64,000 bases of DNA from Adineta vaga (lineage: Eukaryota > Animalia > Rotifera): positions 14,508,001 to 14,572,000 of the forward strand of contig CP075496.1 in the NCBI GenBank assembly GCA_021613535.1. Direction: 5' to 3'. The notes under the pieces were generated by a model that ran no database searches, had not been told where the DNA came from, and was given only the letters and a program-made list of their open reading frames with translations. Position numbers and translations under genes: made by a program. Below are positions 1,275-6,584 of this stretch, in pieces; the first letter of the stretch is position 1, and the number at the start of each line of letters is the position of its first letter.

Positions 1275-3472
1275 ATGTCAATGAAAGATTTAAATAAAGA
1301 ATTTGAAAAACTTTTTCAAAATCGAATTAATGAAAATAAATTACAAAAAAAACTTGATCAATTAATTGATGAATATGGAATTAATCAAATAAATTTATGG
1401 AGAAATTTATCAAATCGAACAAAAAATACTTTATTACATGAACTTGTTGAACAAAATTATCCTGATACTGTTAAACATATGATACAAAAATATCAATTAA
1501 GAACATTTTTTAAACGTGATTCTGATCAATTAACACCTATTGAATTAGCTTTTAGTAATCAAAATTGGAAAATATTTGATCTTTTATTAGAATTTGGTGA
1601 TGAAAAAACTCGAGAACAAGTTTCAAAAGATATTTCTTTAAAAAAACAAAAAGAACAAATGATGAATATTGTTTGGATGGATTTAGAATTTACTTCATTT
1701 GATAATCCACAAATTTTAGAATGTGCTGTTATTATTACAAATAAAGATTTACAAGAAATTAAAAGAAGTATTGATTTATTTTCATTTATTTTCTATTTTT
1801 ATTTTTATTTATTAAAATAGAACAATGGATTATTCATTTTGATCAAGATTTTCTTAGTGGATTAAGTGATTGGCATCAAAATGCTTTTAAAGATATTGAT
1901 GAAGGAGGAAATGGTTTATTTAATGATGTTATTGATTCGAAAATACGAAAAGAACAAGTAGAAATTGAATTATTAGATTTATTAAAAGAATATTGTCCAG
2001 AAAAAGCTTGTCCTTTAGCTGGAAGTTCAATACATGTTGATAAACGTGTTTTGAAATTAGAAATGCCTTCTGTTGATAATTATCTTCATTATCGTGTTAT
2101 TGATGTTTCTTCTTTTACAGAAATAATGAAAAGATGGACACCAAAAACTGCTTCACAATTTTCGAAAGAAATTTCTTCTAATGGACGAGATATTGTTAAT
2201 CATCGAGCAATGGATGATATCGAATGGTCAATTGAAATGATGAAATTATTTCGACCTTTATTAACATCAAAACAGTTGGTTGAATTTGAAAAAGAAATTT
2301 CTTAAAAATTTCTTTTTTTTAGATTTTCTAAAGGATCATCAAGAATCAAAGATGAATCAATTTCAGAGAATTTACCATTAATTCCTTCGTCATTTGATCG
2401 AACAAAATTAAATTCTGAAGAAAAACATTTAATTAAACGAATTGAATTTGAACAAACATTTCATATTGATGAATTACATTTAAATACAGAAGAACAACGA
2501 ATTTATAATGAAAATCCTCATTTACGAGAAGTTTTTCTTAATCATGAACAAATTATTTTTCATCAAGAAGATTTTACATTAGAAAATCGTTTATTAAATC
2601 AATCAATAATTTCAAAAACTAAATTACGTCAAATTCAAACAACTGAAAATTGGACACAACGAAAACTTCTTTTAATTGAAATTGAATTTTTAACAAAATT
2701 TTATAATGAACATGACAAAATTTTAATTATTTATGCTGGTGCTGCACCTGGTTCACATATCAATTATCTTAGTTCATTATTTCCAAATGTCTTATTTAAT
2801 TTATATGATGATAAAACATTTTATTTAAATTATGAAAATAATAATCAAATTAAAATTTTTAAAGAAAATTTTACAAATGATTTAGCGATGAAATATCAAA
2901 ATAATAAAACTAATGAAAAGATTTTATTTATTTCGAATTATCGAACATTTACAAATTATGAAAATGTACAAAATGATATTGATTATGATATGAAAAATCA
3001 AATGAAATGGATTTCAATTCTTAAACCATTTGCTTCTTTAGTTAGATTTTCTCTTCCACGTTTAAATAATTCTTATGAATTTTATCAAGGAATTCTTTTT
3101 AATGATTTATGGTCTTCAACAAAATCAATGGAATGTCGAATTCTTATTGAAAATAATCCAAAATTAATTCTTTATAATTATAATCAATTTGAAAAATCAA
3201 TTCTTTATTTTCATCAATATCAAAGAACTTTGTTTTATCAACATGATTTAGATCATATTGAAACAGAAGGTCTTGATCATTGTTATGATTGTACAGCGGA
3301 AATTTTTATTTTAAAAAATTATTTTTTTACTATTCAACATATTAATGATGAAAAACAATTATATCAATCGATTGCACAATTATCTTATGAAATTTCAAAA
3401 AATATTTCCGATAAATATCGTTTACCTTTTCTTAAAGGAAAAAGATCTTTAAATATTATTCCGAAAAATTAA
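1275..3472 (+). CDS. Ankyrin-repeat / oligoribonuclease (Orn/REXO2, DEDDh) / VP39-type cap 2'-O-methyltransferase-like fusion, ~698 aa, 3 exons
   Basis: Exons 1275-1767, 1821-2274, 2323-3472 are joined by phase-compatible GT-AG introns of 53 and 48 bp. Ankyrin: NTLLHELV, LTPIELA. Orn: IVWMDLEFT, CPLAGSSIHVDKR, HYRVIDVSS, HRAMDDIEWS. VP39/PARP_regulatory-like: WTQRKLLLIEIEFL, IIYAGAAPGSHI, GLDHCYDCTAE. Confidence 0.85.
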
Positions 3473-4897: not shown

Positions 4898-6584
4898 ATG
4901 TCGAATGAAAAAGGATTGAAAGTGTATACATCTAAACCATGGGAAATGATCAAAACAAGTTTTTTAGTAATAACATGGATTGTTTTGGTTCGTTTTTGTT
5001 TTATAATATTAAAAGAATAGATTTTCAATAAAAGATATTATTAATAGGGAATGCATTTAGAGATCGTTGGACCAACATTACAAGTATTAGCTGTTCAAAC
5101 AGGTGTATCAACTACTGGTATAAGTGATATCTTAGTAGCACGTGGTGCTGGTTATATGTTTGGAAATCTTGGTGGAGCGTTAACACAAAAAGTTGTTAAA
5201 AAATATCCGGAAATGTTATTATCAATATCATTTTTAATTGCATCGATTAGTAAATTGTTGATTTTTTATTGAAATAATTTTCTTTTTTCTTTATTTAGCT
5301 ATTTTTATTACACCTTTTATAACAAATCTTCATCTTTTATCGGTTGTATTTTTCTTTCAAGGAATCTCTCAAGGAGTAACTGATCTTGGTTTGTTCTTTT
5401 CATTTGTTTTCTTTTTTCAAATACAATATTCATTTTCTTTTTCAGGTGGAACAAGTCTAATGTTAGCAATGTGGGCTGATAATGTTGCTGCTCCATTGAA
5501 TGTTGTCCATTTAGGTTTTGGTTTTGGTGCTGTTTTTACAAATTTTCTTGTTAGACCATATCTTGTTGAAAAATCTGATTCAATGATTAAAATTCCATAT
5601 TCAATTATTGGTTTTATTTGTTTATTAATAACAATTGGTCATTTTATCTTTGCAATACGTGAATATCAAATAAAACGAAAATCATTACAAAATCGTCCTG
5701 TTGATTATACAACTGTTTCAACAAAAGTTGATTCTAATGAAAATTCAAATGAAAAGAAAGAAAAAATCTCAGAATATTCTCCTCGTTCATGTGGAAATGG
5801 ATATTTTAATTATGGTTTATCAATGTCAATTATTTGGATACTTTATATGTTCTTTTTAAGTGGAAATGATCAAACATTTGGAAAATTCTTTTTTACATTT
5901 GTTCAAAAATCAAATTTCTCTTCGGGAATTAGTGCAACATGGTTTATGATTGTTTATTGGCTTTCATATTCAGTTAGTTTATTAAATTCGAATTCTAATT
6001 TCTTTTCTTTGTTTTTTTTCCTTGAAATTTCAGGTTGGTCGTTTAATTTGTGCAATTCTTTCGATGTTCGTATCAGTTCCTGTAGCATTAAGTGGTTTAT
6101 GGGTTTGTGGAATTATTTTAGCAATAACATGGTTTATTTTTGTTTGGGTTATCAAATTAACAAGTTTAAATTTATTAATTCTTGGTGCATTTACAGGTTT
6201 AGTCTTTTCTCCAACATTTCCATTATCATTTGCATTTATAAATCAAAGATTAAATGTTAATCCATTACTTGTTGGTCTTCTTCTTTCTGGTGCATCACTT
6301 GGTGCAATGACATTTCAAAAACTAGCTGGTAAAAAACAAATATTTTCTTTAAAAAGAAAACAAATACATTTTAAATTTACTTTTAAGGAATCATTTTGGA
6401 TGCACATCCCAAACAGTTTCCAACAATTTTGATTACATGTGTTATTCTTTCAATAATTTTCTTTATTATTGCAATGATTATTAGTTCAGTTCATCAAAAA
6501 AACTTACCTTCAAAACCCAAAGAAATTGTTTATCGAAATAATGAAGAAGAACAAATAGAAATTTATCTTAATCATAATCAATAA
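4898..6584 (+). CDS. MFS transporter, MFSD4/NaGLT1-like, multi-exon
   Basis: Hydrophobic exons with LEIVGPTL, ARGAGYMFG, DLGGTSLMLAMW, LNVVHLGFGFGA, GRLICA and FSPTFP, separated by short GT-AG introns. Confidence 0.85.

What the first reader, a model, noticed from the sequence alone, without database searches (positions are those of the whole stretch)
1275..3472. Ankyrin-oligoribonuclease-VP39-type cap methyltransferase fusion with an altered MTase site
Seen: three ORFs in the track form one gene via two short phase-compatible introns. The Orn DEDDh residues are intact (DLE, VDKR, HRAMDD). In the VP39-like domain the K-D-K-E tetrad appears as K (QRKL), N (ISNYR instead of ISD), R (SLVRF instead of SLLKF) and E (SMECR). 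Known: VP39-type domains bind m7G caps and occur in poxviruses, giant viruses and some protists, and Orn degrades 2-5 nt RNAs. Inference: this is a cap-binding pseudo-methyltransferase tethered to a nanoRNase, possibly clearing capped oligoribonucleotides or viral RNA ends. I do not know this architecture from animals.
Basis: partly seen in the sequence, partly recalled or inferred. Interest (0 to 1): 0.9.

Follow-up and report, generated by a model that had tools for sequence, protein, structure and literature searches.

The report
Rotifer nanoRNase fused to dead methyltransferase
This Adineta vaga gene joins a small-RNA-degrading enzyme (oligoribonuclease) to a poxvirus-type cap methyltransferase domain that has lost both its catalytic and its cap-gripping residues; the combination is found only in bdelloid rotifers, sits unnamed in public databases, and has no known function.

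Summary
Window 1275-3472 (+) is one three-exon gene of Adineta vaga chromosome 4. It encodes about 698 aa: a two-repeat ankyrin-like N-terminus, an Orn/REXO2-type DEDDh exonuclease, a disordered linker, and a VP39/PF01358-fold domain.

The exon-3 frame has no start codon before 2888, which is mid-domain. The 2274/2323 junction recurs in about 20 full-length gene models from seven Adineta and Rotaria species, in the A. vaga chromosome-1 paralogue, and in a metagenomic Adineta-like locus.

In the trees and alignments built here, 53 of 55 members of the fusion clade lack the catalytic lysine, whereas 173 of 272 family members carry K-D-K-E.

The cap-binding inference is not supported. The two aromatic residues that stack on m7G in VP39 are gone, and the Orn 5'-phosphate cap is intact, which points to plain dinucleotide substrates. 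The SAM pocket is kept.

The likeliest reading is an active diribonucleotidase that carries a non-catalytic, methyltransferase-derived ligand-binding module.

No paper on the fusion was found. The scan also noted what is probably a paralogue elsewhere in this genome (s1-498413).

The parts
1275..1767 (+). Exon 1. The start ATG is at 1275; the MSMKDL N-terminus is shared with orthologues. It encodes a helical/ankyrin-like region and the first Orn motif (D-x-E).
1404..1610 (+). Ankyrin-like region of about two repeats (exon-1 residues about 44-112).
   Evidence: Ank_2 22.4 bits, below cut-off. Designed ankyrin proteins match at E 1e-6. Homologues carry PF12796/PF13857.
1768..1820 (+). Intron 1, 53 nt, GT..AG, phase 1.
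   Evidence: The junction residues K-Q-W-I match orthologues.
1821..2274 (+). Exon 2: the rest of the Orn/REXO2 DEDDh domain. Third Asp at 2039-2041, His at 2201-2203, last Asp at 2216-2218. Phosphate-cap Tyr/Arg at 2090-2095 and Ser at 2108-2110.
   Evidence: PF00929 46.5 bits. Human REXO2 is the best solved relative, E 6e-22. Coordinates.
2275..2322 (+). Intron 2, 48 nt, GT..AG, phase 2, a multiple of three. It holds the in-frame TAA at 2303-2305, so a retained intron would give an Ank-Orn-only product.
   Evidence: The same junction appears in NCBI model P0001, in orthologues, and in metagenomic locus L009 with a GTAAGT donor.
2323..3472 (+). Exon 3: linker, helical N-terminal extension, VP39-fold domain, and stop codon at 3470-3472. 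There is no ATG, GTG or TTG in this frame between 2306 and 2888.
2633..3385 (+). PF01358 (VP39-like) Rossmann core. SAM motif I is at 2732-2758 and the D95 equivalent at 2807-2809. Tetrad codons: K 2663-2665, N 2936-2938, R 3044-3046, E 3131-3133. R177 is replaced by S (3050-3052) and F180 by R (3059-3061). The R209 equivalent (3137-3139) and E233 equivalent (3191-3193) are kept.
   Evidence: AF2 pLDDT 94.3. VP39 is the top fold match, TM by target 0.78-0.83.

Best explanation
One gene encodes a protein of about 698 aa, found only in bdelloid rotifers. It consists of an ankyrin-like module, an Orn/REXO2-type 3'-5' diribonucleotidase that is probably active, a flexible linker of about 30 residues, and a VP39-derived Rossmann domain. 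That last domain keeps its SAM/SAH pocket but has lost the catalytic Asp/Lys pair, R177, and both m7G-stacking aromatic residues.

Shown: the gene structure, the domain identities, the residue states and the phylogenetic distribution.

Inferred: the Orn domain still hydrolyses 5'-phosphorylated dinucleotides or very short oligonucleotides. The C-terminal domain no longer methylates and no longer clamps m7G. Instead it acts as a tethered ligand- or partner-binding module (SAM/SAH, or an RNA 5'-proximal backbone) that localises or regulates the nuclease.

Origin: the fusion most likely arose when a stand-alone Ank-Orn gene was spliced onto a downstream stand-alone VP39-like methyltransferase gene, with the old stop codon left inside what became intron 2. 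Stand-alone Ank-Orn genes are still present in Didymodactylos and in protists. Stand-alone K-D-K-E methyltransferase genes are still present on A. vaga chromosome 3 and in Didymodactylos. The fusion predates the Adinetidae/Philodinidae split and later duplicated into at least three clades.
For: Gene structure. There is no start codon in the exon-3 frame before 2888. Both introns are GT..AG and preserve the frame. The junction residues match A. ricciae P0222 and A. steineri P0213. The same order and junction occur in the chromosome-1 paralogue, in L009, and in about 20 full-length models carrying PF00929 plus PF01358.

Orn domain. The DEDDh and phosphate-cap residues are kept in all aligned fusions. 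This domain shows the highest conservation of the protein, 65% mean pairwise identity.

Methyltransferase domain. The tetrad is K-N-R-E. Across 272 family members, 173 have K-D-K-E, but only two members of the fusion clade (P0002 and P0003) have a Lys at the K175 position. The aromatic pair is lost. Motif I, D95, R140 and R209 are kept. The core is 51% conserved across deep paralogues and folds confidently as VP39. In VP39, K175C and D138E are inactive, and K175 was reported to be fully conserved in PF01358 (PMC7736282).

Tether. In the full-length orthologue model, the domains are confident but pTM is 0.57 and residues 315-343 have pLDDT below 50.

Origin. Stand-alone Ank-Orn genes. Stand-alone K-D-K-E paralogues sit outside the fusion clade.
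Against: P0002, from a fusion-type locus, has a complete K-D-K-E, so some members may still be enzymes. Strong retention of the SAM pocket would also fit an altered catalytic activity. The A. ricciae orthologue has lost motif I, so SAM binding is not universal either. No ligand, partner or activity was measured, so the 'regulatory/targeting module' role is an inference by elimination.
Confidence: 0.65

Rival explanations
1. One reading: the dead methyltransferase domain still binds m7G caps and delivers capped oligonucleotides or viral RNA ends to the nanoRNase.
For: It has the VP39 fold. The equivalents of K41, R140, R209 and E233 are kept. The tethered architecture suits substrate delivery.
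Against: Both residues that sandwich m7G in VP39 are lost, here and throughout the fusion clade, while 66 of 67 canonical members keep an aromatic residue at the F180 position. The D182 and R177 equivalents are also changed. The intact Orn phosphate cap demands a plain 5' phosphate on a dinucleotide (10.1101/546648).
Confidence: 0.12
2. The C-terminal domain is still a methyltransferase with changed chemistry or target, for example a base or N-methylation that does not need the catalytic lysine.
For: Motif I and the D95 equivalent are kept in nearly all members. There is purifying selection on the core. P0002 has K-D-K-E.
Against: The K175 position varies freely (T, N, S, Y, R, K) among close relatives, and D138 is mostly N. 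That pattern fits a site released from constraint rather than a site re-tuned for new chemistry. The A. ricciae orthologue has lost motif I and K41. In VP39, D138E and K175C abolish activity (PMC7736282).
Confidence: 0.15
3. There are two separate products. Ank-Orn terminates at TAA 2303, and the methyltransferase part is expressed on its own or is an untranslated relic.
For: The in-frame stop inside intron 2 means that a retained intron would give a product like the stand-alone Didymodactylos gene, which ends at the homologous position. No RNA data were obtained.
Against: 194 codons of conserved open frame lie upstream of the first possible start codon. The junction is conserved across paralogues and species. 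The domain is intact and conserved in dozens of sequences. Only 17 nt separate the stop from the acceptor. SL trans-splicing would not supply an AUG; this last point is from memory of the bdelloid SL sequence and was not checked here.
Confidence: 0.05

Closest known systems
Oligoribonuclease Orn / human REXO2 (DEDDh, PF00929)
   Same: The catalytic D-E-D-H-D residues, the phosphate-cap Ser/Tyr/Arg/Ser and the stacking Trp are all present. REXO2 is the best solved relative (E 6e-22).
   Different: It carries an N-terminal ankyrin-like module, a five-residue insertion after the conserved Trp, and a C-terminal VP39-like domain. It belongs to an Ank-Orn subfamily shared with protists such as Chromera and Paulinella, not to the canonical REXO2-like gene on A. 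vaga chromosome 3.
Vaccinia/monkeypox VP39 cap-specific 2'-O-methyltransferase (PF01358)
   Same: The fold matches (TM by target about 0.8). Also shared are motif I, the D95, K41, E207 and R209 equivalents, and a family-profile match at E 2e-31.
   Different: D138 is N, K175 is R, R177 is S and F180 is R. There is no aromatic residue at the Y22 position. It has an extra helical N-terminal extension of about 100 residues. Methyl transfer and m7G stacking are therefore not expected.
Stand-alone eukaryotic VP39-like 'cap2 methyltransferases' (kinetoplastid MTr2/MTr3-type; Capsaspora, Naegleria, Arcella, Brachionus; A. vaga chromosome 3 copy)
   Same: They share the family, the N-terminal NPHLR-containing extension and the C-terminal GLDHCYDC motif.
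   Different: Those proteins keep K-D-K-E and the aromatic pair, and they are not fused to Orn.
Annotated bdelloid fusions (e.g. Rotaria CAF0976606.1, UniRef100_A0A816TWH4; A. vaga I4U23_001358)
   Same: Same three-part architecture and the same degenerate tetrad.
   Different: The window's own NCBI model (I4U23_021758, 438 aa) omits window 1821-2122 and 2771-3253, so it lacks the cores of both domains.

Membership tests
Orn/REXO2 oligoribonuclease (PF00929, DEDDh) | Family-level sequence match above the curated threshold | tested here: met
   RNase_T scores 46.5 bits on exon 2 (cut-off 24), with its N-terminal part on exon 1. REXO2 and Orn structures match at E 6e-22 to 4e-12.
Orn/REXO2 oligoribonuclease (PF00929, DEDDh) | DEDDh catalytic residues | tested here: met
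   D and E in the W-M-D-L-E motif, D in I-H-V-D, and H and D in H-R-A-M-D-D. All are aligned to REXO2 and conserved in every aligned fusion.
Orn/REXO2 oligoribonuclease (PF00929, DEDDh) | 5'-phosphate cap (Ser, Tyr, Arg, Ser) that restricts the site to dinucleotides | tested here: met
   G-S-S-I-H and L-H-Y-R-V-I-D-V-S-S align to the REXO2 cap residues. The residue roles come from 10.1101/546648.
Orn/REXO2 oligoribonuclease (PF00929, DEDDh) | Diribonucleotidase activity and homodimer | not testable with these tools
   Needs an enzyme assay and a measurement of oligomeric state.
VP39-type cap 2'-O-methyltransferase (PF01358) | Family-level sequence match and fold | tested here: met
   61.4 bits against a cut-off of 25.4. 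Family profile vs VP39 E 2e-31. Foldseek E 1.7e-17, TM by target 0.81.
VP39-type cap 2'-O-methyltransferase (PF01358) | SAM-binding motif I and the acidic residue that binds the ribose (D95) | tested here: met
   Y-A-G-A-A-P-G-S-H and the D95 equivalent are present.
VP39-type cap 2'-O-methyltransferase (PF01358) | Catalytic K-D-K-E, or D138-K175-E207-R209 | tested here: not met
   D138 is N and K175 is R. In VP39, K175C and D138E are inactive (PMC7736282).
VP39-type cap 2'-O-methyltransferase (PF01358) | Aromatic pair that stacks on m7G (VP39 Y22 and F180) | tested here: not met
   Arg stands at the F180 position, and there is no aromatic residue in the Y22 segment. Canonical members have Y/W/F in 66 of 67 sequences.
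Ankyrin repeat proteins | Repeat profile match above threshold | tested here: inconclusive
   Ank_2 scores 22.4 bits, below its cut-off of 27.3. Designed ankyrin proteins match at E 1e-6 over about two repeats. Homologues P0217, P0231 and P0292 carry Pfam Ank hits.

The most novel reading that the evidence does not exclude
The dead VP39-like domain is a sensor or adaptor for methylation-related ligands: SAM/SAH, or 2'-O-methylated, cap-proximal di- or oligonucleotides left over after mRNA decay. It would gate or feed the attached diribonucleotidase. That would make this a dedicated, bdelloid-specific pathway linking cap-proximal RNA remnants or methyl-donor status to the last step of RNA turnover. 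By Rosetta-stone logic, it would also point to an unrecognised functional link between stand-alone Ank-Orn and VP39-like enzymes in protists.
Probability: 0.12. Interest if true: 0.75.

Novelty: new variant of a known kind. Interest (0 to 1): 0.45.

Why it matters
K175 has been described as fully conserved in PF01358. Here a whole animal clade, with at least three paralogue lineages and dozens of sequences, keeps the VP39 fold and SAM pocket under selection while discarding both the catalytic pair and the m7G clamp, and ties the domain to an intact nanoRNase. That gives a natural pseudo-enzyme series for asking what a cap methyltransferase scaffold is used for once catalysis is gone. It also hints at a functional link between terminal RNA degradation and cap or methylation biology. 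On the practical side, the window's NCBI gene model is wrong: it gives 438 aa instead of about 698 aa and loses both domain cores.

Tried and rejected
RNA evidence. The look-up of sequencing runs listed 13 holders, none on record as RNA.

Joined protein. The 698-aa spliced product was never assembled for a search or a fold. Exons were searched separately by reference, and the full-length model used the A. steineri orthologue P0213 instead.

Trees. The mixture-model tree did not finish in two 300-s runs. The tree reported here is LG+G4 'quick', so deep branches, such as the placement of Didymodactylos P0020 inside clade B1, should be treated with caution.

Synteny. tblastx of the chromosome-1 locus against the window found nothing shared beyond the gene itself in the short flanks held, so ohnology is untested.

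Operon or SL trans-splicing reading. Rejected, because there is no start codon and only 17 nt lie between the stop and the acceptor.

Pseudogene reading. Rejected, because the frames are intact and conserved and the fold is confident.

Literature. Searches for bdelloid + oligoribonuclease, VP39 + rotifer, PF01358, and oligoribonuclease + ankyrin + fusion found nothing on this architecture.

Full report
**What is there.** The window is Adineta vaga chromosome-scale contig C4, 14,508,001-14,572,000. The top protein hit is A. vaga I4U23_021758.

They join through two short GT..AG introns:
- exon 1: 1275-1767
- intron 1: 1768-1820 (53 nt, phase 1, split codon gives Lys)
- exon 2: 1821-2274
- intron 2: 2275-2322 (48 nt, phase 2, split codon gives Gln; contains the in-frame TAA at 2303-2305)
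- exon 3: 2323-3472

The product is 164 + 1 + 150 + 1 + 382 = 698 aa.

The exons were handled separately by reference.

**Is it one gene?** The exon-3 frame is open from 2306, but it has no ATG, GTG or TTG before 2888. Position 2888 lies after the SAM-binding motif of the domain. The Pfam PF01358 match starts at residue 104 of the exon-3 translation. The methyltransferase-like domain therefore cannot be translated on its own.

The predicted junction residues fit the orthologues. Around junction 1 the window reads E-I-K-R-K-Q-W-I. Around junction 2 it reads L-L-T-S-K-Q-F-S-K. A. ricciae P0222 reads L-L-T-N-K-Q-F-L-K at junction 2, and A. steineri P0213 is similar.

The same order, Ank-Orn then the VP39-like domain, is found in four other settings:
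- On A. vaga chromosome 1 (L002; NCBI I4U23_001358, 759 aa).
- In about 20 full-length NCBI/UniRef models carrying PF00929 plus PF01358. These come from Rotaria sp. Silwood1 and Silwood2, R. sordida, R. magnacalcarata, A. steineri and A. ricciae.
- In Logan genomic contigs.
- In a JGI metagenome contig from an Adineta-like animal (L009). There the intron sits at the same phase-2 position, with a textbook GTAAGT donor that overlaps the stop codon.

NCBI's own model for this locus (P0001, 438 aa) also uses the 2274/2323 junction. However, it removes window 1821-2122 and 2771-3253, which are the cores of both domains. I regard that as a mis-model.

Direct RNA evidence is missing. No listed run is on record as RNA.

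**The nuclease.** Exons 1 and 2 together form an Orn/REXO2-type DEDDh domain. Human REXO2 is the best solved relative, at E 6e-22.

All five catalytic residues are present. So are the residues aligned with the REXO2/Orn '5'-phosphate cap' (Ser, Tyr-Arg, Ser) and the stacking Trp. In Orn and REXO2 this cap constricts the site to 5'-phosphorylated dinucleotides, and mutating the Arg abolishes activity (bioRxiv 10.1101/546648).

This domain is the best-conserved part of the fusion family, with 65% mean pairwise identity among 16 full-length proteins.

It belongs to an Ank-Orn subfamily that also exists as stand-alone genes of about 315-390 aa. These occur in Chromera, Paulinella, other EukProt transcriptomes and the bdelloid Didymodactylos. 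The Didymodactylos gene ends at the position homologous to the window's intron-2 donor, and nothing methyltransferase-like lies in the 2 kb downstream.

**The VP39-like domain.**
- Sequence: PF01358 scores 61.4 bits.
- Model: an AlphaFold2 model of exon 3 is very confident, with pLDDT 94.3 and pTM 0.93.
- Fold: its only strong fold matches are vaccinia and monkeypox VP39, at E about 1e-17 and TM by target 0.78-0.83.
- Residue mapping: a pairwise alignment and a 100-sequence family profile against VP39 (E 2e-31) give the same mapping. K41 is Lys, D138 is Asn, K175 is Arg and E207 is Glu. R209 is kept and R177 is Ser.

**The change is a property of the clade, not a quirk of this copy.** Among 272 family members collected here, 173 are K-D-K-E.

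In an ML tree (LG+G4, quick search), all bdelloid sequences form one clade with 100% support. Stand-alone K-D-K-E genes (the A. vaga chromosome-3 copy and Didymodactylos P0039) lie outside a 98%-supported clade of 55 sequences that contains every Orn fusion.

In that clade the K175 position is T, N, S, Y or R. The exceptions are two sister sequences, P0002 (K-D-K-E) and P0003 (K-N-K-E). The D138 position is mostly Asn.

VP39 K175C and D138E are inactive, and K175 was reported as fully conserved in PF01358 (PMC7736282).

**Cap binding.** In the profile-to-VP39 alignment, VP39 Y22 and F180, which sandwich m7G, align with a conserved Tyr and with a Y/W/F column. That column is aromatic in 66 of 67 K-D-K-E members.

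The window protein has Arg at the F180 position. It has no aromatic residue anywhere in the segment that aligns with Y22. The whole fusion clade, P0002 included, shows the same loss.

By contrast, the following are kept: motif I, the D95 equivalent, and the R140, R209 and E233 equivalents.

Taken together, the domain looks like a SAM/SAH-pocket-bearing scaffold that neither methylates nor clamps m7G.

The core is still 51% identical on average across deep paralogues, so it is maintained by selection.

**Architecture.** A full-length AlphaFold2 model of the A. steineri orthologue P0213 has confident domains (mean pLDDT 87.6). However, pTM is only 0.57, and the linker at residues 315-343 has pLDDT below 50. 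The C-terminal module therefore appears to be tethered rather than docked.

**Most likely function and origin.** The most likely reading is an active Orn-type diribonucleotidase or nanoRNase with two non-catalytic appendages. One is the ankyrin-like module. The other is a methyltransferase-derived ligand- or partner-binding module that localises or regulates the nuclease.

The fusion probably arose by splicing a stand-alone Ank-Orn gene onto a neighbouring stand-alone VP39-like gene, with the former stop codon now inside intron 2. This happened before Adineta and Rotaria diverged, and the fused gene then duplicated.

Steps that are shown: the gene model (comparatively, not by RNA), the domain identities, the residue states and the distribution. 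Steps that are inferred: the enzymatic activity, the loss of methyl transfer and cap binding, and the regulatory role.

**Rival explanations.**
1. This is weakened by the lost aromatic pair and by the intact Orn phosphate cap.
2. Altered but active methyltransferase. The conserved SAM pocket and P0002 keep this alive. The free variation at the K175 position, and the A. ricciae orthologue that has lost motif I and K41, argue against it.
3. Two separate products. This is unlikely as the sole outcome, but intron-2 retention would yield an Ank-Orn-only isoform and remains untested.

**Novelty.** No paper on this architecture was found. The proteins are nevertheless already in NCBI and UniRef as unnamed or auto-named models. 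The scan also noted what is probably a paralogue elsewhere in this genome (s1-498413).

I class it as a new variant of known kinds and score interest at 0.45. It is a clean, clade-wide pseudo-enzyme fused to an intact nanoRNase, but its biology is unknown and no expression data were obtained here.

Noticed in passing
L007 (G000:C1:4265448-4268885): An inverted partial copy of the Ank-Orn part of the chromosome-1 fusion lies about 25 kb from it. It is 94.9% identical over 1328 nt. The ankyrin frame is broken and no methyltransferase part follows, so it is probably a recent duplicate pseudogene.
   Followed up: partly
L008 (G000:C3:7740850-7744191): The canonical REXO2-like gene of A. vaga (33% identical to the window's Orn) is followed, in the same open frame, by a second, degenerate Orn-like repeat that keeps an H-Y-R motif but not the D-E-D-D residues.
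   Followed up: no
L002 / P0224 (A. vaga I4U23_001358): The NCBI model of the chromosome-1 paralogue reads through intron 1 in frame, adding about 30 residues that no orthologue has. The window's own model, I4U23_021758, instead drops window 1821-2122 and 2771-3253.
   Followed up: yes
L015 and L016 (Didymodactylos carnosus contigs): In Didymodactylos, an Ank-Orn gene and a degenerate (K-D-R-E) VP39-like gene sit on separate short contigs. No partner lies within 2 kb downstream of the first or within 0.8 kb upstream of the second. Yet the tree places the methyltransferase inside the fusion clade. This could mean a later fission, a long intron, or a tree artefact.
   Followed up: partly
P0222 (A. 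ricciae orthologue of the window gene): The closest full-length orthologue has also lost SAM motif I (it reads Y-L-E-N-S-S-N-S-H) and K41 (now Asn), and it no longer scores as PF01358. This Adineta lineage seems to be decaying further than the others.
   Followed up: partly
P0043 (Rotaria sp. Silwood1, 549 aa): This model joins TPR repeats to the C-terminal two-thirds of a fusion-clade VP39-like domain. It may be a chimeric annotation or a second architecture.
   Followed up: no
window 5051-6260 (+): A run of hydrophobic ORFs looks like a multi-exon membrane or transporter gene downstream of the finding.
   Followed up: no
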